Shown one piece after another: positions 19,281 through 25,084 of a stretch of DNA of 64,000 nt. Under the pieces are notes generated by a model. It did not search any database. It had not been told where the DNA came from and saw nothing but the letters and a program-made list of their open reading frames with translations. Location: the IMG/VR virus record IMGVR_UViG_3300042261_002390, positions 62,001 through 126,000 of that record, one strand, 5' to 3'. The translations under genes were made by a program, and so were the position numbers. Positions within the stretch are counted from its first letter, which is position 1, and each line of letters starts with the position of its first letter.

Positions 19281-19406
19281 AATAATTTGTAAATTTTTAT
19301 AAAAAATTGTAACTTTTTTAAAACTCATACGTAGGTATATATCACAAGCATATTGAAAAAAATAAAAAAATTTTTAAAAAATGCTTGCAGATTGAAATAA
19401 AGGTGT

Positions 19407-19414
19407 TATATTTG
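19407..19414 (+). promoter_or_regulatory. Bacteroidota-type promoter driving the RNA island
   Basis: TATATTTG with TTG at 19385-19387. Confidence 0.75.
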
Positions 19415-19459
19415 CACCGTCAATTTGAAACACGTTCATTGTAAGATTGAAAATTATAT

Positions 19460-19591
19460 GGGGAAGTATGCGAATAAAAAACAAAGAATATAGTCGTAAT
19501 ACTCCTACGGAGAACTGGTTATGTTTTCAGTAAAGGTACAGCAATTTGTGTTGAAAACAAATGTTTGTGGGTTCAACTCCCGCCTTCCCCA
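19460..19591 (+). ncRNA. tRNA-like RNA 1 (anticodon-position UGA) with ~60-nt D-loop insertion
   Basis: Acceptor GGGGAAG/CTTCCCC, D stem TGC/GCA, anticodon stem TTTGT/ACAAA with loop GTTGAAA, 5-nt variable loop, T arm GTGGG-TTCAACT-CCCGC. Confidence 0.8.
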
Positions 19592-19642
19592 CCGATGGTC
19601 ATTTTTTGTACTTTTTAGTATTTATATTAAAAAGTATATAAT

Positions 19643-20314
19643 ATGGCTAGAATTGAAAAAAAATATCATTTCATATATAAAACAACATGTATGTTAAATG
19701 ATAGGTATTATTTTGGAATGCATTCTACCGACAATATAAATGACGGATATATGGGTTCTGGAAGAAGATTAAAACGTTCATTGAAAAAATATGGTAAAGA
19801 AAATCATATCGTTGAAATTATTGAATTTTTACCTGACAGAAAATCACTTTTTCTTAGAGAAAAAGAAATTGTTAGCTTAAATGAAATTGCTAAAAAAAAT
19901 TGCATGAATTTAAAAGTTGGCGGTGATGGTGGGTTCTCTAGTGAACAGCATAGAATAAAATTTTTTGAAAAAGCAAGTGAATATTCAAAAATTAATTCAT
20001 TACTTGCTGTTAAACGTAAAGTCGAAATCCGTAAAAACAATCCAAATTGGCAGTTGGATTTAAATCGTAAGACTGGTGAAGGTGTTAGAAAATATTATCG
20101 TGATAATAATATTGTTGGTAGTTTTTATGGAAAAAAACACAGTGAACTATCTAAGGAAAAAATCAGTAAAACAAATAAAATAGTTCTTGCTGGAACAGGT
20201 AATTCACAATATGGCACACGTTGGATTACAAACGATATTGATAATAAAAAAATAATGAAAAATGATAATCTGCCAGATGGTTGGCATTATGGTAGAATTA
20301 TAAAGAAATTATAA
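19643..20314 (+). CDS. GIY-YIG (Seg-like) homing endonuclease with NUMOD3-like motif
   Basis: FIYKTT...YYFGMHST...DGYMGSG, FYGKKHSELSKEKIS. Confidence 0.85.
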   Translation: MARIEKKYHFIYKTTCMLNDRYYFGMHSTDNINDGYMGSGRRLKRSLKKYGKENHIVEIIEFLPDRKSLFLREKEIVSLNEIAKKNCMNLKVGGDGGFSSEQHRIKFFEKASEYSKINSLLAVKRKVEIRKNNPNWQLDLNRKTGEGVRKYYRDNNIVGSFYGKKHSELSKEKISKTNKIVLAGTGNSQYGTRWITNDIDNKKIMKNDNLPDGWHYGRIIKKL

Positions 20315-20335
20315 AGGAAACTGATTGTTATTTCA

Positions 20336-20408
20336 GTACAATTAACTCAGTGGGTAGAGTATTTGCCTATCAAGCGAAACGCCGTTGGTTCAAATCCAGC
20401 ATTGTAAA
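20336..20408 (+). tRNA. Atypical tRNA, anticodon ATC (Asp-like), possibly non-functional
   Basis: Cloverleaf: GTACAAT/ATTGTAA (1:72 mismatch), D ACTC/GAGT, anticodon TTTGC-CTATCAA-GCGAA, T GTTGG-TTCAAAT-CCAGC; no CCA. Confidence 0.7.
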
Positions 20409-20448
20409 ACAATAGATAACAAACGAAATATCCTTTTTAAAAATATAT

Positions 20449-20532
20449 TGTGGGATAGTGTAATTGGTAACATATTGGGCTCATAACCCAAAGACAGTAA
20501 TGCTAGTGAAGGTTCGATTCCTTCTCCCGCTA
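20449..20532 (+). tRNA. tRNA-Met(CAT), initiator-type, with 16-nt variable region
   Basis: 1:72 mismatch, anticodon stem TTGGG/CCCAA with three G-C pairs, loop CTCATAA, T arm GAAGG-TTCGATT-CCTTC. Confidence 0.85.
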
Positions 20533-20580
20533 CCGGGGTCATTTTTGAAATTACAAGTATTTATATGAAAAATATAAATC

Positions 20581-21249
20581 ATGAGTAATTACAATGACAA
20601 CAAAAAGTATCATTTCATATATAAGACAACTAATATTCTAAATGGTTCATATTATATTGGAATGCATTCCACAAATAATATCAGCGATGGGTATTTGGGA
20701 AGTGGAAAAAGAATAAAACGTTCTTTGAAGAAATATGGTAAAGATAACTTCAAATTTGAAATTTTAGAATTTACTGAAAATCGTAAAATGCTGATTGAGC
20801 GAGAAATTGCTATAGTAAACTCCGATGTCTTGAAAGATAAACTATGTTTAAACTTGAAAGAAGGTGGTTGTGGTGGATTATGTAATGAAACACATTCTAA
20901 AAATTTTCATGCTGCTGGTGGAAGAAAAGTACGTGAGTATTTTAGAGAAATTCACGCCAATAGAATGAAAAATGATGCTGAATATCATGAAAAATGGAAA
21001 ATTGCGTATAAAAATGCAATTGGCTCTCGTAAAGGAGACACTAATCCATTTTATGGTAGAAAACATGATGATGAGTGGAAAAAAACAATTAGCGATATTA
21101 TGAGAGTAAAACAATCAGGAACTAATAATTCTCAATATAATACTTGTTGGATTACTAATGAAATTGAGAATAGGAAAATAAAAAAAGATGAAATAGTTCC
21201 AGTTGGTTGGAGATTCGGTAGAAATTTGAAGATATTGAAAAAACAATGA
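20581..21249 (+). CDS. GIY-YIG (Seg-like) homing endonuclease, paralog of the 19643 ORF
   Basis: FIYKTT...YYIGMHST...DGYLGSG, NPFYGRKH, NSQY.T.WITN. Confidence 0.85.
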   Translation: MSNYNDNKKYHFIYKTTNILNGSYYIGMHSTNNISDGYLGSGKRIKRSLKKYGKDNFKFEILEFTENRKMLIEREIAIVNSDVLKDKLCLNLKEGGCGGLCNETHSKNFHAAGGRKVREYFREIHANRMKNDAEYHEKWKIAYKNAIGSRKGDTNPFYGRKHDDEWKKTISDIMRVKQSGTNNSQYNTCWITNEIENRKIKKDEIVPVGWRFGRNLKILKKQ

Positions 21250-21373
21250 ATTAGTAAGCGATTCAGTAATGGAGAGAGTAATTGCTGCAAATTGTTGAAC
21301 ATGAAAAGGCTGGTAGACCGTAAATTATTTCTCAGTAGTGCCTCACATAACCTCAATGACAATTACTAATTTA
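21247..21373 (+). ncRNA. Candidate structured RNA
   Basis: AATTAGTAA (21249-57) pairs with TTACTAATT (21363-71); inner GAGAGAGTAATT/AATTATTTCTC helix. Confidence 0.4.
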
Positions 21374-21384
21374 TTCAAACAAAT

Positions 21385-21519
21385 GGAGAAGTAGCAAAGT
21401 GATAAACAAGAAATACTATCTCAATGCTCTTGAAAAAAGAGAACTAATGGTGTTTTCAGTAAAGGTAATGCAATTGTGTTGAAAACAATCTATCGGTGGT
21501 TCAAATCCATCCTTCTCCG
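21385..21519 (+). ncRNA. tRNA-like RNA 2 (anticodon-position UGA) with ~60-nt D-loop insertion
   Basis: Acceptor GGAGAAG/CTTCTCC, D stem GCA/TGC, anticodon ATTGT-GTTGAAA-ACAAT, T arm GGTGG-TTCAAAT-CCATC; same architecture as 19460-19591. Confidence 0.8.
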
Positions 21520-21523
21520 CATT

Positions 21524-21880
21524 ATGCTCAGTCAAGCCTCTTATTCGAAAGAATAATGTAACTGGGCGAAAGACCTGATTCCCGCTAGTCCCTGAAGAAA
21601 TTCAAACTGGTGGGTACGGTTTAAAAATATTAGGGAAAACGTAAAGTGTTTACAGTAACATCGGTTCGACTCCGATATTGTTCGCCAAAAAATGAGCGAT
21701 TAGCCAAGTGGTTAAGGCACAAGTCCGTTAAACTTGCAAAAGAAAAGAATACTTTAAAATTGTTCCCAAAACTTATTGATTTTTGGCTGTTGGTGTCAGT
21801 GTTTTTTTAAAAAATGGGGCGCACCACCTAACATTTGATGGTTAAGAATGGTTTTTCGTCGCTAACGAGTGACTTTTTTT
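21524..21880 (+). ncRNA. Structured RNA containing a circularly permuted tRNA-like module (21660-21736); Y RNA (YrlA)-like candidate
   Basis: T arm, then acceptor 3' strand + GCCA, 6-nt linker, acceptor 5' strand, D arm, GTT anticodon hairpin; extra hairpins; ends at a terminator. Confidence 0.6.
21858..21880 (+). terminator. Intrinsic terminator
   Basis: GTCGCT-aacg-AGTGAC plus T7. Confidence 0.7.
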
Positions 21881-21895
21881 CAAAAAAGATGAATT

Positions 21896-22087
21896 TTAAC
21901 TATGAAAAAGGAGTAGATAGTGAAGCCGGGAGAGCGTTAACTCAAGGGTGCACACTAAGGATAAGCAGCAATGCTCAACTCTCTAATGGTGTGTGAAGCA
22001 CATATATTGTCGCCCGAAAGGATAAAAGAATGGCGTATGTGGTTAGCAAGATTCCTGATAAAAGCTATTGAGTAGTTAATTTTTTTT
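21896..22087 (+). ncRNA. Candidate ~185-nt structured RNA
   Basis: Ends pair (TTAACTA/TAGTTAA); internal CACATA/TATGTG; GCAA- and GAAA-capped hairpins; T8 after. Confidence 0.45.
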
Positions 22088-22269
22088 ACTGAAGAACTTG
22101 TTGTGTATGCAGTAAATTGAAATTTGTCGCCCATGATGGTGGCGACACAAACTTACAAGATACAACAGAACTTCTTCTCAATATTAGAGAAGCAGTGTTT
22201 TTCTGAAAAAACAAGTGGGCGGGGAACTCGACGTGGAAACGTGTCGAAGTACTTCGTCCATTTTTTTTT
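22088..22269 (+). ncRNA. Candidate structured RNA(s) or leader upstream of the vWA gene
   Basis: TTGTTGTGT/ATACAACAG, GTCGCC/GGCGAC, CTTCTC/GAGAAG; then a long hairpin TGGGCGGGG...CTTCGTCCA plus T9. Confidence 0.5.
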
Positions 22270-22349
22270 GTAGTTATTGTAACATTTTTGAATTCAATTC
22301 GTATAATTGATTCTGAATAAAATAAATTGAATTAAATTAATATTGTAGT

Positions 22350-23975
22350 ATGGAAAAATTGGTATTGACACAAAACATGGTTACATCAGTCAAGAAAGCA
22401 TTGATTGATGGATTAACTATTGCTTCTGGTGCTAAGAGCGTTGCTACTTATTACCATAGCAAAGATGAACAGATGAAGGCAATACAAGCACAAATTAAAG
22501 GCATGTATGGTCTTTCGAAAGAACTCCCCTTGATTGTTGCAACACAAAAAGGAGCAACAGGACGATTTGTATCTGAAGTATTATTAAATGAATTTAAAAA
22601 TACTTTAAAGGGTGGCGCATGTAATATTGTCAATCCGATTGATTGGTATGACAATGGTTTGGGTGATAAGGTATTGTTAAATGCTTTGAGAAATTTATCT
22701 GAGAATGGTTTACCTTATGTTCTCCGTTTATATGTTGATTTGAAAAACGCCAAAGTTAATAATGAAAGGTCGAGGAAAATCTTTCTTGGTTTCATTTGGG
22801 GTCAGCCAAATCTTGAATTTTATTCGATGAAATATCGTAATAAAATTGCCGATGTATTGAAGCATATTTATGGTCAAAAGAAAACATCAATATTGCTCTC
22901 AATTGCTCAAAAAGCCGTTAATGGTGGCGAATTTATTGCTACAGATAAGGAAATGAAGATTGCCAATGATTTGTTGCTTAAATATTATGATGGTAATGCG
23001 ATTAAAGCATTTAAATTGTTATTGTTCTTATTTAAAAAGGATAAGGGTGTTAACTATGATGCTGCTGAATTTTCATTGTTGAGCGAATACCAGAAAGCTA
23101 AGGTAAATATTAGTTTAGCAAAGCTTGTACCTGAAGAAGTATTGATTGGTTTGATTTCGAATAAAAATCATCCTCAATATAGTACAATGTGGTCAACTGA
23201 TGCACAAAAGGCTGCAACGAAGGCAATGATTCGTAAAAATGTTGAAGTTACGTCGGTAAATCAACAAGTACGTCAAACTAAATCAACAGCTAAGTTAGGT
23301 GTTGAAAAAGAGGTTGAACTTGAAAAAGCTACCGATTTCTTGGCACTTTACAAAACTGCATATGAAAATGGTTGGACTGATGAATTGAAAATTGCAATTG
23401 GTAAACTCGCAGTTAAGAAGAAAATTCAAGGATTCTTATATCAGAACATCGGTATTATCGTTGACGATAGTGCTTCTATGACTGGTAACAAGAATGAGTC
23501 TAAGAATACACCGAGAGCAATTGCCGAATTTACTGGTTTAGTACTTCAAAATTCTGCAAGGAATTCTGTTGTTGCACGTACAAGTGAATTTAGTACAGAT
23601 TTAGCATCAGCATTTATCCAATTATTGAAAGATGAAAATGATAGTCAATATGATGCTATTTTCATCATTACCGATGGTTATGAAAATGCTTACGATGGAT
23701 TGACGAATGAAGTTATCTCAATCTGGCAAGCTGAAACTGGTAGAAGTCTACCAATATTCCAGATTTCGCCTATTACTAGTGCCGAAATGGGTGCTAATGT
23801 GAGAAAGATTGGTGATAGTGTTGTTCCTATGTCGGTGAATAATCCATCTGCAATTCAGCCACAAATCAATGCGAGATTGCTTGAAATTGACGCTAAACTT
23901 TGGTTGGAAAATGAAGTACGTCAATTGGAATCAATTTCGATTACAAGAAAAGCAAAAATTAGTGTAAACGTTTAA
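22350..23975 (+). CDS. vWA-domain protein with long helical N-terminus, putative Ro60/TROVE-like RNA-binding protein
   Basis: C-terminal MIDAS: IIVDDSASM, STD, FIITDGYEN; 541 aa, Ro60-like size and layout. The TROVE assignment is inferred. Confidence 0.65.
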   Translation: MEKLVLTQNMVTSVKKALIDGLTIASGAKSVATYYHSKDEQMKAIQAQIKGMYGLSKELPLIVATQKGATGRFVSEVLLNEFKNTLKGGACNIVNPIDWYDNGLGDKVLLNALRNLSENGLPYVLRLYVDLKNAKVNNERSRKIFLGFIWGQPNLEFYSMKYRNKIADVLKHIYGQKKTSILLSIAQKAVNGGEFIATDKEMKIANDLLLKYYDGNAIKAFKLLLFLFKKDKGVNYDAAEFSLLSEYQKAKVNISLAKLVPEEVLIGLISNKNHPQYSTMWSTDAQKAATKAMIRKNVEVTSVNQQVRQTKSTAKLGVEKEVELEKATDFLALYKTAYENGWTDELKIAIGKLAVKKKIQGFLYQNIGIIVDDSASMTGNKNESKNTPRAIAEFTGLVLQNSARNSVVARTSEFSTDLASAFIQLLKDENDSQYDAIFIITDGYENAYDGLTNEVISIWQAETGRSLPIFQISPITSAEMGANVRKIGDSVVPMSVNNPSAIQPQINARLLEIDAKLWLENEVRQLESISITRKAKISVNV

Positions 23976-23986
23976 AATTTGAACAT

Positions 23987-25084
23987 ATGAATACTAGAGA
24001 TTTTTCAGAATTATTAAAAGGTTGTCGTCCTGTTAAGGATAGTGATGGCAACATCGTAGTTCAGTCAATAATGAACATGCAGATTGTATGTTTAACTACT
24101 GATAATGAGTTTTCGTTGGATAGTCGTTTCGGTAATCCTTTAACTGCTTTGAAAGCAGGTAACTCTTCATATGGTCAAATTAATTTTACTAATAAAGAGA
24201 ATAAGGAAATTATCGTTCCTACTCAAATGGCTGTTATGACCAAACAAACTGCCCAAAACCACGGTATGACTAAAGCAGGTTATATTCCCGCTAAAGGAAA
24301 TATTACATTTAGGGATGCTGGTTGTGTTCAAGGTTCTCAAGGCGGTCATTTCAGTGACACTCAGGAGTTCCGTATGTTGCCAATATCAATGCGTGAAATG
24401 GTACTTGATACTATTGGTACTCCGGAATCATATCAAAGAATTTATCCTGCAATTAATAAATTGGGTGTTGACACACAATCAAATTCAGGTAGTTATTTGA
24501 ATGTTTATTTCGATAAATACGATAAGAAACTTGAACAGTTCATCGCACATTTTGAACGTCCAAAAAACCTTATTGGTATTGTTGTGTTGGTTGATGACGA
24601 AATTGTTGGTATCGATAAGTTTCCATCATTCACATATGCAGAACAGGTTTGGGATATGATGATTCGTGACTGTTATGGGTCACTTGCAATTATTTCTGAA
24701 TTGAAATCTAAGAAATCACGTGCAGTATTTGCTGAATCATATAATGAAGTGAAGAAACATCGTGAAGATGTTGTAACTATGCTTGAAAAAGCGTTGTTAA
24801 AGACAAAACAGAAAATGACTGCAAGTGTTCAGGAAAAGATTCAAGAATTGCTTGATTTAACTTTCGATGCAACTCCTGATACTGTAGGTAACCCAACAGC
24901 AGGTAGTCATGCACCAAAATCATATGTCCTTAAAACTGAAGGATATGTTGGTCAGGTATTAACTGAAAACGAATACAACCATATGGTTAGTATCGTTAAA
25001 AGGGAAAGATTTGACCCAACTGCATTTCGTCAGGTAAACGAGTTAAGAAATAAAGCTCGTAAACAAGACAGATTCACATTATAA
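23987..25084 (+). CDS. ARPP-family-like (DUF6569-type) protein
   Basis: KQ.AQNH, AGCVQGSQGG, IGIVVLVDDEIVGID, RDCYG recall ARPP domains; 11 nt after the vWA gene. Confidence 0.55.
   Translation: MNTRDFSELLKGCRPVKDSDGNIVVQSIMNMQIVCLTTDNEFSLDSRFGNPLTALKAGNSSYGQINFTNKENKEIIVPTQMAVMTKQTAQNHGMTKAGYIPAKGNITFRDAGCVQGSQGGHFSDTQEFRMLPISMREMVLDTIGTPESYQRIYPAINKLGVDTQSNSGSYLNVYFDKYDKKLEQFIAHFERPKNLIGIVVLVDDEIVGIDKFPSFTYAEQVWDMMIRDCYGSLAIISELKSKKSRAVFAESYNEVKKHREDVVTMLEKALLKTKQKMTASVQEKIQELLDLTFDATPDTVGNPTAGSHAPKSYVLKTEGYVGQVLTENEYNHMVSIVKRERFDPTAFRQVNELRNKARKQDRFTL

What the first reader, a model, noticed from the sequence alone, without database searches (positions are those of the whole stretch)
21565..21860. 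GGCGAAAG motif with an 11-bp long-range helix that encloses the permuted tRNA module
Seen: GGCGAAAGACC (21565-75) can pair with GGTTTTTCGTC (21850-60; 9 Watson-Crick + 2 GU). The 3' strand overlaps the terminator stem, so the two structures compete. Established (recalled): the 5' strand of the bacterial Y RNA Ro-binding helix fits GNCGAAN(0-1)G. Inference: the Ro-binding stem of an enlarged (~300 nt) Y-like RNA, or a termination switch.
Basis: partly seen in the sequence, partly recalled or inferred. Interest (0 to 1): 0.6.

Follow-up and report, generated by a model that had tools for sequence, protein, structure and literature searches.

The report
Phage Ro60 locus with permuted-tRNA Y RNA
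The 11-bp long-range helix is most likely a chance match, but it lies in a jumbo-phage array of tRNA-derived RNAs, one a circularly permuted tRNA closed by its own conserved stem, just upstream of a very divergent Ro60 gene, so this is probably a new variant of the known Ro60/Y-RNA system.

Summary
The helix is not beyond chance: 47% of shuffles of the 501-nt region give an 11-bp helix. It is also not conserved. The 5' strand is a linker between two accessory hairpins that most relatives lack. Positional homologues pair at 3-9 of 11 positions. GNCGAAN0-1G occurs upstream of the module in 1 of 46 distinct loci, the window's own. The outer 3 bp are taken by a local hairpin and by the terminator, so there is no real competition with termination.

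The permuted tRNA is a self-contained ~135-nt RNA (21633-21767). Its own ends form a bipartite stem (P1 5 bp, internal loop, P2 10 bp) enclosing T arm, closed acceptor hairpin (RCCA encoded in 34/48 copies), D arm and an anticodon-like arm. In 48 distinct copies 98% of cells pair and 23 of 31 pairs show compensatory changes.

The 541-aa protein 583 nt downstream on the same strand folds as Ro60 (TROVE + vWA with a MIDAS motif), although Pfam misses it.

The likely Ro60 handle is P1/P2, which recurs in sister RNAs of the array. That it binds Ro60 is inferred, not shown.

The parts
21565..21575 (+). GGC (21565-67) is the 3' end of the M2a hairpin stem. GAAAGACC is a non-conserved linker between M2a and M2b.
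21850..21860 (+). It is the end of the near-invariant motif GGTTAAGAATGGTTTT plus the first 3 nt of the terminator stem.
21633..21767 (+). M3, a circularly permuted tRNA-like RNA and the Y RNA candidate. P1 21633-37/21763-67. P2 21642-51/21747-56. Joiner ACAGUAA. T arm 21660-76. Acceptor hairpin 21677-83/21694-700, with GCCA at 21684-87 in its loop. U8 A9. D arm 21703-18. Anticodon-like arm 21720-36. A-rich linker.
   Evidence: 132 bits to the model built from 48 copies
21526..21567 (+). M2a, an accessory hairpin (GCTCAGT/ACTGGGC outer stem, C-GAAA-G tetraloop). Present in 13 of 58 distinct related loci.
   Evidence: U.G to U-A in L322; CACGGT/ACCGTG in L027
21578..21617 (+). M2b, an accessory hairpin with visibly covarying outer and inner stems. 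Present in 22 of 58 loci.
21785..21828 (+). M4a, a hairpin with a conserved internal loop (CAGNG / GGGGC) and a U-run/A-run apex.
   Evidence: 6 pairs with compensatory changes
21827..21855 (+). M4b, the near-invariant CCTAACATTTGA ... GGTTAAGAATGGTTTT. Relatives insert an optional hairpin between the two halves. Its pairing is unresolved.
   Evidence: 51 of 58 loci
21858..21880 (+). Intrinsic-terminator-like hairpin (6 bp, loop AACG) followed by T7.
21385..21519 (+). M1, a normal-order tRNA-like RNA (anticodon loop GUUGAAA). The same P1/P2 stem, here closed by a loop, is inserted in the D region.
22088..22178 (+). M5, the same P1/P2 terminal stem (GAAGAA/TTCTTC, TGTTGT/ACAACA) enclosing a simple hairpin. 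A candidate second, smaller Y-like RNA.
   Evidence: homologues visible
22350..23975 (+). 541-aa divergent Ro60 orthologue: helical TROVE-like ring (about residues 8-356) and vWA domain (about 366-528) with DxSxS and TDG motifs.
23987..25084 (+). 365-aa ARPP-1 (PF20208) protein, a conserved downstream partner of the Ro60-like gene.

Best explanation
The 11-bp helix is a fortuitous complementarity. One strand is a lineage-specific linker between two accessory hairpins. The other is the invariant 3' tail and terminator of the neighbouring RNA.

What is there is the non-coding part of a phage Ro60 locus. It is an array of tRNA-derived structured RNAs on the + strand of a jumbo phage of at least 246 kb, interspersed with GIY-YIG homing endonucleases, and it ends 80-580 nt before a very divergent Ro60 (TROVE + vWA) gene and its ARPP-1 partner.

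The 'permuted tRNA module' is a complete unit of about 135 nt (21633-21767). Its 5' and 3' ends form a bipartite stem: P1 of 5 bp, an asymmetric internal loop with invariant AAC, and P2 of 10 bp. From that stem a full tRNA core emerges at the variable-arm position, in the order T arm, closed 7-bp acceptor hairpin, U8 A9, D arm, anticodon-like arm.

Shown here: the secondary structure, its conservation, the recurrence of the same terminal stem in sister RNAs (M0, M1, M5 and the stem around the tRNA at 20336-20408), and the Ro60 fold of the neighbouring protein.

Inferred: the RNA acts as a YrlA-type Y RNA. P1/P2, with its sequence-conserved 5' strand GGGAAAAC...GUGUUU, would be the handle bound by the phage Ro60. 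The tRNA-like domain would be the effector or decoy module that engages tRNA-recognising host factors (RNase P, CCA-adding enzyme, modification enzymes, exonucleases or anticodon nucleases). The RCCA encoded in the acceptor loop suggests RNase P cleavage and a CCA 3' end, as reported for M. smegmatis YrlA.
For: Structure of M3: in 48 distinct copies 98.0% of cells pair, against 79.0% in shuffles. 23 of 31 pairs show compensatory changes. The covariation score is 0.491 against 0.140, reached by 0 of 500 shuffles, and slid controls pair at 37-55%. The P2 extension pairs in 100% of cells, with a U-A to A-U swap. P1 changes in a compensatory way in L033 (GGAAA/TTTCC) and in L055 (GAGAA/TTCTC).

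tRNA core: the invariant or near-invariant columns are U8, A9, G10, G18 and G19 of the D loop, and GGTTCRA of the T arm. RCCA follows the acceptor 3' strand in 34 of 48 copies.

Conservation: M3 lies within 2.5 kb upstream of the gene in 57 of 58 distinct loci, and the P1/P2 stem in 58 of 58, with a mean of 3.9 copies. In L055 M3 is followed directly by a terminator, so M4 and M2 are dispensable.

Protein: embedding neighbours include TROVE/vWA_Ro60 clusters at 0.94. D372, S374, S376 and T441-D442-G443 are invariant. The AF2 model has pLDDT 72. The top 13 Foldseek hits are all Ro60, Rsr or phage phiLo Ro60 over the full length, with probability 1.00 and E 2e-5 to 2e-3. In VIA-align the top 10 are all Ro60/TROVE, Z 10.8-13.6 over 386-401 residues, followed by vWA-only hits.

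Precedent: YrlA RNAs lie within 4 kb of Ro60 on the same strand, have the order T, AS, D, and occur in phages (PMC4201824). Thermus phage phiLo Ro60 binds two Y-like RNAs encoded just upstream of its gene (PMC12135203). Some jumbo phages carry TROVE proteins, which in cellular organisms work with a tRNA-like partner (PMC7824862).

A distant lineage (LR756500.1; Ro60-like 28% identical, ARPP-1 31% identical) also has tRNA-like RNAs carrying this stem 3 kb upstream on the same strand.

Against: - No RNA data exist. None of the public runs holding this DNA is RNA, so transcript ends, processing and expression are unknown.
- Ro60 binding to P1/P2 is untested, and P1/P2 looks neither like the metazoan GGUCCGA helix nor like GNCGAAN0-1G.
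- The Rfam YrlA model does not match anywhere in the 246-kb record (best 11.3 bits against a cut-off of 69).
- The same stem also flanks an ordinary-order tRNA (20314-20435). In LR756500.1 it also occurs in tRNA-like genes 18 and 40 kb from the Ro60 gene. That fits a general tRNA-processing role as well as a trans-acting protein handle.
- All loci come from one phage group with conserved synteny, so co-occurrence with Ro60 is not independent evidence.
- The Ro60 assignment rests on a medium-confidence model (pLDDT 72, TM 0.25-0.40). Helical repeats can reach Z of about 13 by chance, though the two-domain, full-length, Ro60-only top list argues against that.
Confidence: 0.6

Rival explanations
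1. tRNA-maturation reading. The array is an unusual phage tRNA gene cluster and P1/P2 is a leader-trailer or intron-like processing module. A host RNase III-type enzyme or an unidentified phage nuclease would cut it, and one of the phage RNA ligases might rejoin the ends. M3 would then be a true permuted tRNA gene. It would mature through a circular or nicked intermediate into a two-piece or re-ligated tRNA ending in the encoded CCA. Ro60 next door would act only in general RNA quality control, or the adjacency is inherited synteny.
For: - The same stem encloses a whole ordinary-order tRNA (window 20314-20435; 35 bits to the M3 model, full length).
- It is inserted in the D region of tRNA-like genes with perfect 7-bp acceptor stems.
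- In LR756500.1 it occurs in tRNA-like genes far from Ro60.
- RCCA is encoded after the acceptor 3' strand in 34 of 48 M3 copies, and U33 is present in 32 of 48.
- The phage encodes 2-3 Rnl2-family RNA ligases.
- Permuted tRNA genes matured through circular intermediates are known in algae and archaea (my own recollection; the papers found were not read).
Against: - The 7-nt anticodon-like loop has no conserved anticodon: there are 25 different loops among 48 copies, and U33 is missing in a third.
- No splicing endonuclease and no RtcB is found in the 246-kb record.
- The stem is conserved in sequence (GRRRRAAC, GUGUUU/AAAUAC). This points to a specific protein or tertiary contact rather than RNase III, which reads shape.
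- The topology and the position next to a Ro60 gene are exactly those of YrlA (PMC4201824).
- The two readings are not mutually exclusive.
Confidence: 0.25
2. One reading: an enlarged Y-like RNA of about 300 nt (about 21560-21880). Its Ro-binding stem is the GGCGAAAGACC/GGTTTTTCGTC helix and it carries a GNCGAAN0-1G motif, specific to this phage's sub-lineage.
For: - The motif and the pairing are present.
- The inner 8 bp are in the MFE structure and have p about 0.80 in the ensemble.
- Both strands are retained in a 92%-identical relative.
- A CGAA motif upstream of a phage Ro60 gene is how the phiLo Y-like RNAs were found.
- A Ro60-like gene is indeed downstream.
Against: - A helix of this kind arises in 47% of shuffles.
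- The motif is absent upstream of M3 in 45 of 46 distinct loci whose Ro60 proteins are 57-89% identical.
- The 5' strand sits in a segment missing from most relatives.
- Relatives that keep M2a and M2b have non-complementary linkers (L027 TGAATGGA, L014 TTTCTGGA), and positional homologues pair at 3-9 of 11.
- GGC is used by the M2a stem, and the one substitution seen (G21565A in L322) favours M2a over the long helix.
- The 3' strand stays invariant where no partner exists.
- M3 already has its own covarying closing stem.
Confidence: 0.07
3. Termination switch: formation of the long helix sequesters the 5' half of the terminator stem and allows read-through towards the Ro60 gene.
For: The 3' strand overlaps the terminator stem by 3 nt (21858-60).
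Against: - The 3 overlapping pairs have p about 0, while the terminator has p about 0.99 and the inner 8 bp have p about 0.80. The two structures coexist (MFE folds).
- No equivalent anti-terminator pairing exists in relatives.
- A further RNA (M5), a second terminator-like element and a promoter-like site (22279-22307) lie between this terminator and the gene.
Confidence: 0.03
4. Decayed tRNA genes: the permuted order is debris from homing-endonuclease-driven rearrangement of a tRNA cluster (the T arm of one tRNA next to the 5' half of another) and has no function.
For: - Two GIY-YIG/NUMOD3 endonuclease genes lie in the array.
- Module order is shuffled between relatives.
- Chen et al. warn that tandem tRNAs can mimic the T-AS-D order.
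Against: - Every helix of M3, including the closing P1/P2 and the acceptor hairpin that joins the two 'halves', shows compensatory changes across 48 distinct copies.
- M3 is present in 57 of 58 loci.
- The alternative, ordinary-order acceptor pairing found by the Rfam tRNA model (28.8 bits, below threshold) shows no covariation: 65.8% paired against 64.4% in shuffles.
Confidence: 0.03

Closest known systems
YrlA-type bacterial and phage Y RNAs with Ro60/Rsr (Chen et al. 2014, PMC4201824; Rfam RF02553)
   Same: - Encoded within 4 kb upstream of a Ro60 orthologue, on the same strand.
- tRNA-like domain in the permuted order T arm, closed acceptor-like stem-loop, D arm.
- Canonical T-loop and D-loop nucleotides.
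- 7-bp acceptor stem, as in M. smegmatis YrlA, which is cut by RNase P and receives CCA.
- Several Y-like RNAs per locus.
- Occurs in phages.
   Different: - No match to the RF02553 model (11.3 bits against 69).
- The conserved 5'-strand motif is GGGAAAAC...GUGUUU, not GNCGAAN0-1G.
- The ends leave the tRNA core at the variable-arm position, and a complete anticodon-like hairpin is kept, whereas in YrlA the V stem-loop precedes T.
- RCCA is genomically encoded in the acceptor loop.
- The same terminal stem is also inserted into, or wrapped around, ordinary-order tRNA-like genes.
- The Ro60 partner is so divergent that Pfam TROVE misses it.
Thermus phage phiLo Ro60 with Yrl1 and Yrl2 (PMC12135203; PDB 9KOP, 9L5Y)
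   Same: - A phage-encoded Ro60 (HEAT ring + vWA) with Y-like RNAs encoded immediately upstream.
- It is the best structural match of the window's protein (Z 13.6 and 13.0).
   Different: - About 12% sequence identity.
- The phiLo RNAs were defined by a CGAA motif in a bulged 5'-3' stem and are not described as permuted tRNAs.
- Here the CGAA motif is not conserved and the stem is different.
Circularly permuted tRNA genes (Cyanidioschyzon merolae and other algae, some archaea)
   Same: - The 3' half (T arm and acceptor 3' strand) lies upstream of the 5' half.
- The termini pair with each other.
- A short intervening sequence joins the acceptor 3' and 5' strands.
   Different: - Those are matured by the BHB splicing endonuclease and a ligase into decoding tRNAs, and CCA is added later.
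- Here no EndA and no RtcB is found, and the terminal stem was not examined for a BHB motif.
- The anticodon loop is not conserved.
- CCA is encoded.
- The host is a bacteriophage.
Two-piece (permuted) tmRNA genes
   Same: The acceptor piece with T arm and CCA precedes the 5' acceptor strand. In the window's copy a G3-U70 pair is present.
   Different: - ARAGORN reports no tmRNA.
- Full D and anticodon-like arms are present.
- No pseudoknots or tag reading frame were seen.
- G3-U70 is not conserved among the copies.

Membership tests
YrlA / bacterial Y RNA (Rfam RF02553; Chen et al. 2014) | Encoded within about 4 kb of a Ro60 (TROVE) orthologue, on the same strand | tested here: met
   M3 ends at 21767 and the Ro60-like ORF starts at 22350, both on the + strand. 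The Ro60 fold rests. M3 is within 2.5 kb of the gene in 57 of 58 loci.
YrlA / bacterial Y RNA (Rfam RF02553; Chen et al. 2014) | tRNA-like domain in the order T stem-loop, acceptor-like stem-loop, D stem-loop, with tRNA-like conserved nucleotides | tested here: met
   Covariation-supported T arm, acceptor hairpin and D arm. Invariant U8, A9, G10, G18, G19 and GGTTCRA.
YrlA / bacterial Y RNA (Rfam RF02553; Chen et al. 2014) | [quoted passage not shown] | tested here: not met
   It is present only in the window's own lineage, 68 nt outside the covarying unit (21565-72). It is absent within 200 nt upstream of M3 in 45 of 46 distinct loci. In the 92%-identical L322 the first G is A.
YrlA / bacterial Y RNA (Rfam RF02553; Chen et al. 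2014) | Scores above the family's covariance-model threshold (69 bits) | tested here: not met
   The best hit in the whole 246-kb record is 11.3 bits, elsewhere in the genome. RF02553 does not appear at E up to 10 over 19500-23500.
YrlA / bacterial Y RNA (Rfam RF02553; Chen et al. 2014) | Bound by the cognate Ro60 protein | not testable with these tools
   Complex prediction takes no RNA, and no RNA or RIP data exist for this phage.
Ro60 / TROVE proteins (for ORF 22350-23975) | HEAT-repeat ring followed by a C-terminal vWA domain with a MIDAS motif | tested here: met
   The model is helical over residues 8-356 and alpha/beta over 366-528. The top 13 Foldseek hits and the top 10 VIA hits are all Ro60/Rsr/TROVE, full length, Z 10.8-13.6. 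DxSxS (372-376) and TDG (441-443) are invariant.
Ro60 / TROVE proteins (for ORF 22350-23975) | Recognised by sequence profiles (Pfam PF05731 TROVE, PF25045 vWA_Ro60) | tested here: not met
   No TROVE hit for the protein, for 25 family members, or in the six-frame genome scan. There is only a faint VWA_2 hit (E 0.019-0.16). PDB sequence and profile searches are blank.
Permuted tRNA genes (decoding tRNAs matured via circular intermediates) | 3' half upstream of 5' half, with pairing termini | tested here: met
Permuted tRNA genes (decoding tRNAs matured via circular intermediates) | Canonical anticodon loop (U33, conserved anticodon) and a BHB splicing system | tested here: not met
   There are 25 different 7-nt loops in 48 copies, and U33 is present in 32 of 48. 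No tRNA-intron endonuclease and no RtcB is found in the record. The record is about 75% complete, so absence is not proof.
Two-piece tmRNA | tRNA-Ala-like acceptor, reduced D arm, pseudoknots and a tag reading frame | tested here: not met
   ARAGORN finds no tmRNA. Rfam gives no tmRNA hit at E up to 10. Full D and anticodon-like arms are present.
Transcription attenuator / termination switch | A conserved alternative helix that is mutually exclusive with the terminator | tested here: not met
   The overlap is 3 nt, and both structures coexist in the ensemble. No conserved partner exists in relatives.

The most novel reading that the evidence does not exclude
This clade of freshwater and wastewater jumbo phages has turned one sequence-specific terminal stem (P1, AAC loop, P2, ACAGUAA joiner) into a portable handle for its own very divergent Ro60. 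It has grafted that handle onto a family of tRNA-derived RNAs in three topologies: wrapped around a whole tRNA, inserted in the D region of a tRNA, and opened so that the tRNA becomes circularly permuted. The permuted member, with its genomically encoded RCCA in the acceptor loop, would be cut by RNase P into a two-piece, CCA-ended and possibly chargeable tRNA mimic held together by the Ro60-bound stem. It would serve as a decoy or repair platform against host tRNA-targeting defences.
Probability: 0.15. Interest if true: 0.85.

Novelty: new variant of a known kind. Interest (0 to 1): 0.55.

Why it matters
Ro60/Y-RNA particles are conserved from bacteria to humans. What the bacterial and phage versions do, and how Ro60 recognises Y RNAs that lack the metazoan helix, is still open.

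This locus offers three things:
- a Ro60 so divergent that profile searches miss it, so phage Ro60s are probably under-counted;
- a Y-like RNA family invisible to the Rfam YrlA model, with an unusually clean, covariation-proven permuted-tRNA fold and a different conserved terminal stem;
- a natural series in which the same stem is attached to tRNA bodies in three topologies.

That series makes 'which part is the Ro60 handle and which part is the tRNA mimic' directly testable with one protein and a few transcripts.

For the scan itself, it shows that a motif plus a long-range helix found in a single sequence is weak evidence. The right closing stem was 60-90 nt inside the proposed one.

Tried and rejected
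- Rfam, both at gathering thresholds and at E up to 10, gives only tRNA-like hits and no Y RNA, tmRNA, GOLLD/ROOL or ribozyme family. RF02553 finds nothing over the whole record.
- ARAGORN reports two odd tRNAs and no tmRNA.
- Pfam, PHROGs, and PDB phmmer and profile hmmsearch are blank for the 541-aa protein. Six-frame scans of the record for TROVE and VWA are blank.
- Public reads: 7 DNA runs hold the locus and none is RNA. The one metatranscriptome of a related study holds almost none of its words.
- The ordinary-order acceptor pairing of the Rfam tRNA hit 21694-21766 is rejected: it shows no covariation.
- An alternative helix in M1 between acceptor nucleotides 4-10 and CTATCTC (Px) has only weak support, 81% paired against 78% in shuffles. 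It is left open.
- Two candidate pairings inside M4b (CCUAAC with GUUAAG, and AACAUU with AAUGGUU), and a possible 5-7-bp pairing of M3's GGAAAAC with GGUUUU(UC), cannot be tested because the columns are invariant. Variants of GGTTAAG are not compensated (read by eye).
- AAAGACC-like partners of TGGTTTTT upstream of M3 in L017-L019 lie inside the P2 3' strand of another module, at varying distances, so they are coincidental.
- The genome-contig scan for the stem motif gave 120+ hits. All were coding or random except one 2.3-kb phage-like contig binned with a Bacteroidota MAG. It gave no host and no cellular homologue.
- The search for an M3-type RNA in the distant phage LR756500.1 gave only weak hits or hits that look like tandem tRNAs.
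- Literature searches for permuted tRNAs or D-loop insertions in phages found nothing relevant.
- The large representative-protein search was not run, as the operators advised. No alternative genetic code was used.
Full report
**Setting.** The window is bases 62001-126000 of a 246-kb IMG/VR virus record (about 75% complete, GC about 31%). The region 19300-22300 is a + strand array of tRNA-like sequences with two GIY-YIG/NUMOD3 homing-endonuclease genes inside it (19643-20314 and 20581-21249). Replication genes lie upstream (RecA-like, 5'-3' exonuclease, DnaB-like helicase).

**1. The observation.** A terminator-like hairpin (21858-73 followed by T7) overlaps the 3' strand by three bases.

The helix is not more than chance would give:
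- An ungapped helix of at least 11 bp with at most 2 G-U pairs arises in 47% of dinucleotide shuffles of the 501-nt region. The real sequence contains a second, unrelated one.
- The motif occurs about 20 times in the window.
- In the Boltzmann ensemble of 21520-21885 only the inner 8 bp form (p about 0.80). GGC is held by a local hairpin (21526-32 with 21561-67, p about 1.0) and GTC by the terminator (p about 0.99). Helix and terminator therefore coexist and do not compete (MFE folds).

**2. Comparative test of the helix.** The 541-aa protein downstream has hundreds of relatives. 72 related viral loci were fetched with 4 kb of upstream DNA.

- M1, M3 and M4 are found in most relatives. M2 is mostly absent, and in several loci M1 abuts M3 directly.
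- In 58 distinct loci, the M2a hairpin is present in 13 and the M2b hairpin in 22. M3 is present in 57 and the M4b motif in 51.
Relatives that keep both hairpins have unrelated linkers (L027 TGAATGGA, L014 TTTCTGGA).
- The positional homologues of the two strands pair at 3-9 of 11 positions in 12 relatives, against 11 of 11 only in the window.
- GNCGAAN0-1G lies within 200 nt upstream of M3 in 1 of 46 distinct loci, the window's own.
- The 3' strand belongs to GGTTAAGAATGGTTTT plus the terminator, which stays nearly invariant whether or not any partner exists upstream.
- 7-9-bp matches to TGGTTTTT turn up in every locus at varying distances, as expected for A/U-rich sequence. The AAAGACC-like ones in L017-L019 sit inside another module's stem.
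- In a close relative (L322, 92% identical here) the only change inside either strand is 21565 G to A. It turns a U-G pair of the M2a stem into U-A and would make an A-C mismatch in the long helix. The inner 8 bp are identical there and so uninformative.

The helix is therefore neither statistically unusual nor conserved.

**3. What the permuted module is.** 48 distinct copies of M3 align well (A1). I wrote the following structure by hand and then tested it:
- P1 (1-5 with 131-135)
- P2 (10-15 with 119-124)
- T arm
- a 7-bp acceptor hairpin
- a 3-bp D stem
- a 5-bp anticodon-like stem

98.0% of cells pair, against 79.0% in shuffles. 23 of 31 pairs carry compensatory changes. The covariation score is 0.491 against 0.140, reached by 0 of 500 shuffles. 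Slid controls pair at 37-55%.

P2 extends by four more pairs (GUGUUU with AAAUAC). These pair in 100% of cells and include one U-A to A-U swap. P1 shows compensatory variants GGAAA/TTTCC (L033) and GAGAA/TTCTC (L055).

The ordinary-order reading suggested by the sub-threshold Rfam tRNA hit (21694-21766, 28.8 bits) pairs the 5' acceptor strand with a downstream ATTGTTC. It shows no covariation, 65.8% paired against 64.4% in shuffles.

The core carries the tRNA hallmarks: U8, A9, G10, G18 and G19 of the D loop, and GGTTCRA of the T arm. A C that would match C48 precedes the T stem in most copies; this I read by eye. RCCA follows the acceptor 3' strand in 34 of 48 copies. The 7-nt 'anticodon' loop is not conserved: there are 25 variants, and U33 is present in 32 of 48.

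M3 is thus a class-II-like tRNA body. Its acceptor end is closed and its ends leave through a long, open 'variable arm' (P2 and P1). A covariance model built from A1 scores the window's copy at 132 bits. In L055 M3 is followed directly by a terminator, so neither M2 nor M4 is part of the essential unit.

**4. The same terminal stem elsewhere in the array.** The stem consists of a 5' strand GRRRR-AAC-N5-7-GUUUWCAGUAA and a 3' strand AAAUAC-N...-YYYYC. It recurs in four other places:
- M5 (22088-22178), around a simple hairpin.
- 20314-20435, around the ordinary-order tRNA that ARAGORN calls at 20336-20408. This is a 35-bit, full-length hit of the M3 model.
- M1 (21385-21519) and M0 (19460-19591), where it is closed by a loop and inserted in the D region of tRNA-like genes.

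In 27 such copies (A3) the distal 5' acceptor strand pairs with the 3' strand in 100% of cells, and 6 of 7 pairs covary. The T arm pairs at 100%, P2 at 95.8% and P1 at 92.5%.

M4a (21785-21828) is a further hairpin with six covarying pairs. M2a and M2b are accessory hairpins whose covariation is visible by eye.

The motif is essentially confined to this phage group. A scan of 185,579 prokaryote genomes gave only random or coding hits, apart from one 2.3-kb phage-like contig binned with a Bacteroidota MAG.

**5. The neighbouring protein.** Pfam, PHROGs and PDB sequence searches say nothing about the 541-aa ORF 22350-23975. A six-frame scan of the record for TROVE and VWA is empty. The fold evidence says otherwise:
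- Language-model look-alikes include TROVE/vWA_Ro60 clusters at 0.94.
- The family alignment has invariant D372-x-S374-x-S376 and T441-D442-G443, the MIDAS signature of vWA domains.
- An AlphaFold2 model (pLDDT 72) is helical over residues 8-356 and alpha/beta over 366-528.
- The top 13 Foldseek hits in the PDB are all Ro60, Rsr, or Ro60 of Thermus phage phiLo, over the full length (probability 1.00, E 2e-5 to 2e-3). The next hit is unrelated at E 0.02.
- In VIA-align the top ten are the same proteins (Z 10.8-13.6, 386-401 residues aligned over model residues 12-529). vWA-only matches follow.

I take it as a very divergent Ro60 orthologue (confidence about 0.85).

It is followed by a 365-aa ARPP-1 (PF20208) protein. 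The pair is also adjacent in an uncultured 462-kb phage, LR756500.1, where the Ro60-like protein is 28% identical and ARPP-1 is 31% identical (E 8e-47). In that phage, tRNA-like genes carrying a recognisably homologous stem lie 3 kb upstream on the same strand. Others lie 18 and 40 kb from the Ro60-like gene, on its downstream side.

**6. How it most likely works.** The known frame comes from three papers:
- YrlA Y RNAs lie within 4 kb of Ro60 on the same strand, have a tRNA-like domain in the order T, acceptor-like stem-loop, D, and occur in phages. M. smegmatis YrlA has a 7-bp acceptor stem, is cut by RNase P and receives CCA (PMC4201824).
- Thermus phage phiLo Ro60 binds two Y-like RNAs encoded just upstream of its gene and can form complexes with host PNPase (PMC12135203).
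- Some jumbo phages carry TROVE proteins, which in cellular organisms work with a tRNA-like partner (PMC7824862).

My best explanation is that M3 is this phage group's YrlA analogue. The sequence-conserved terminal stem P1/P2 would be the Ro60 handle. It is shared by M5, M1, M0 and the stem around tRNA 20336-20408, which would be sister Y-like RNAs or Ro60 clients. The tRNA body would be the effector or decoy module.

The structure, the conservation and the protein fold are shown here. Ro60 binding, processing at the acceptor loop and the downstream function are inferred.

The main rival (about 0.25) is that P1/P2 is a processing or intron-like module of an odd tRNA cluster, and that M3 is a true permuted tRNA gene. 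In its favour:
- the stem around an ordinary tRNA;
- its presence far from Ro60 in LR756500.1;
- the encoded CCA;
- the phage's Rnl2-type RNA ligases.

Against it:
- the unconserved anticodon loop;
- the absence of RtcB and of a splicing endonuclease;
- the sequence-specific conservation of the stem.

The two readings are not exclusive.

**7. Membership and novelty.** M3 meets the positional and topological criteria of YrlA. It fails the Rfam model (11.3 bits against 69) and lacks a conserved GNCGAAN0-1G. I therefore file it as working like a YrlA-type Y RNA, not as a member of RF02553.

The protein has the Ro60 fold but fails the Pfam profile. Literature searches found no description of permuted tRNAs or D-region insertions in phages.

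Verdict on novelty: a new variant of a known kind. The finding as written (the 11-bp helix and the motif) is a chance feature.

**8. Limits.**
- No RNA run holds this locus, so transcript ends are unknown. A conserved box GTTCTTTAAAATAYWA just 5' of GGGAAAAC in many relatives might be a promoter, but that is conjecture.
- All related loci share synteny, so co-occurrence with Ro60 is not independent evidence.
- The Ro60 call rests on a medium-confidence model.
- Read laying, the large representative-protein search and complex prediction were not used. No non-standard code was applied.

Noticed in passing
window 21385-21519 and 19460-19591: Two paralogous tRNA-like genes of about 133 nt in normal order, each with a perfect 7-bp acceptor stem and anticodon loop GUUGAAA. 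They carry an insertion of about 60 nt in the D region that contains the same P1/P2 stem as the permuted RNA. 27 distinct copies covary (acceptor 100% paired). Homologues exist in the distant phage LR756500.1.
   Followed up: partly
window 20314-20435: The 'tRNA-Asp (anticodon AUC)' called at 20336-20408 is wrapped in a leader-trailer P1/P2 stem (AAGGA/TCCTT, TTGTTAT/ATAACAA) of the same family. It gives a full-length 35-bit hit of the M3 covariance model.
   Followed up: partly
window 20449-20534: The tRNA-Met(CAU)-like gene has a 13-nt insertion in the variable region that contains ACAGUAA, the joiner motif of the P1/P2 stem family. Its first acceptor pair is mismatched.
   Followed up: no
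window 19643-20314 and 20581-21249: Two GIY-YIG/NUMOD3 (SegB/SegE-like) homing-endonuclease genes sit inside the RNA array. The order of RNA modules differs between related phages, which suggests endonuclease-driven shuffling.
   Followed up: partly
window 23987-25084; L312 4997-6034: An ARPP-1 (PF20208) protein directly follows the Ro60-like gene. The pair is kept in a phage whose Ro60-like protein is only 28% identical (ARPP-1 31% identical, E 8e-47). This points to a functional Ro60/ARPP-1 module that I have not seen described.
   Followed up: partly
window about 21290-21375: Another conserved non-coding module (…CATGAAAAGGCTGG…GTGCCTCACATAA…). It lies directly upstream of M3 in 14 of 58 related loci and here sits between a homing-endonuclease gene and M1. 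Its structure was not analysed.
   Followed up: no
window 21827-21855: CCTAACATTTGA … GGTTAAGAATGGTTTT is almost invariant in 51 of 58 loci, with an optional hairpin inserted between the two halves. No pairing partner could be established. It may be a protein site or a tertiary element.
   Followed up: partly
window 21900-22080: The stretch between the M4 terminator and M5 is conserved at 81-90% in the close relatives L321-L323 and has no convincing ORF. It may be another structured RNA.
   Followed up: no
upstream of M3 in many related loci (e.g. L004, L017, L023, L051); window 21617-21632: A box GTTCTTTAAAATAYWA lies 1-3 nt before GGGAAAAC in many relatives, whatever module precedes it. It is absent where M1 abuts M3. 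It may be a phage promoter that would start transcription at P1.
   Followed up: no
G000 C1 201329-203852 and 225872-226321 (outside the window): Two to three Rnl2-family RNA ligase paralogues are encoded. No RtcB and no tRNA-splicing endonuclease was found in the 246-kb record.
   Followed up: partly
window 22279-22307: A sigma-70-like promoter match (GTAACA, 17 nt spacer, TATAAT) lies 43 nt before the Ro60-like start codon. The TTGTAACATTTTT part is also seen in relatives (L055, L323). The gene probably has its own promoter, downstream of two terminator-like elements.
   Followed up: no
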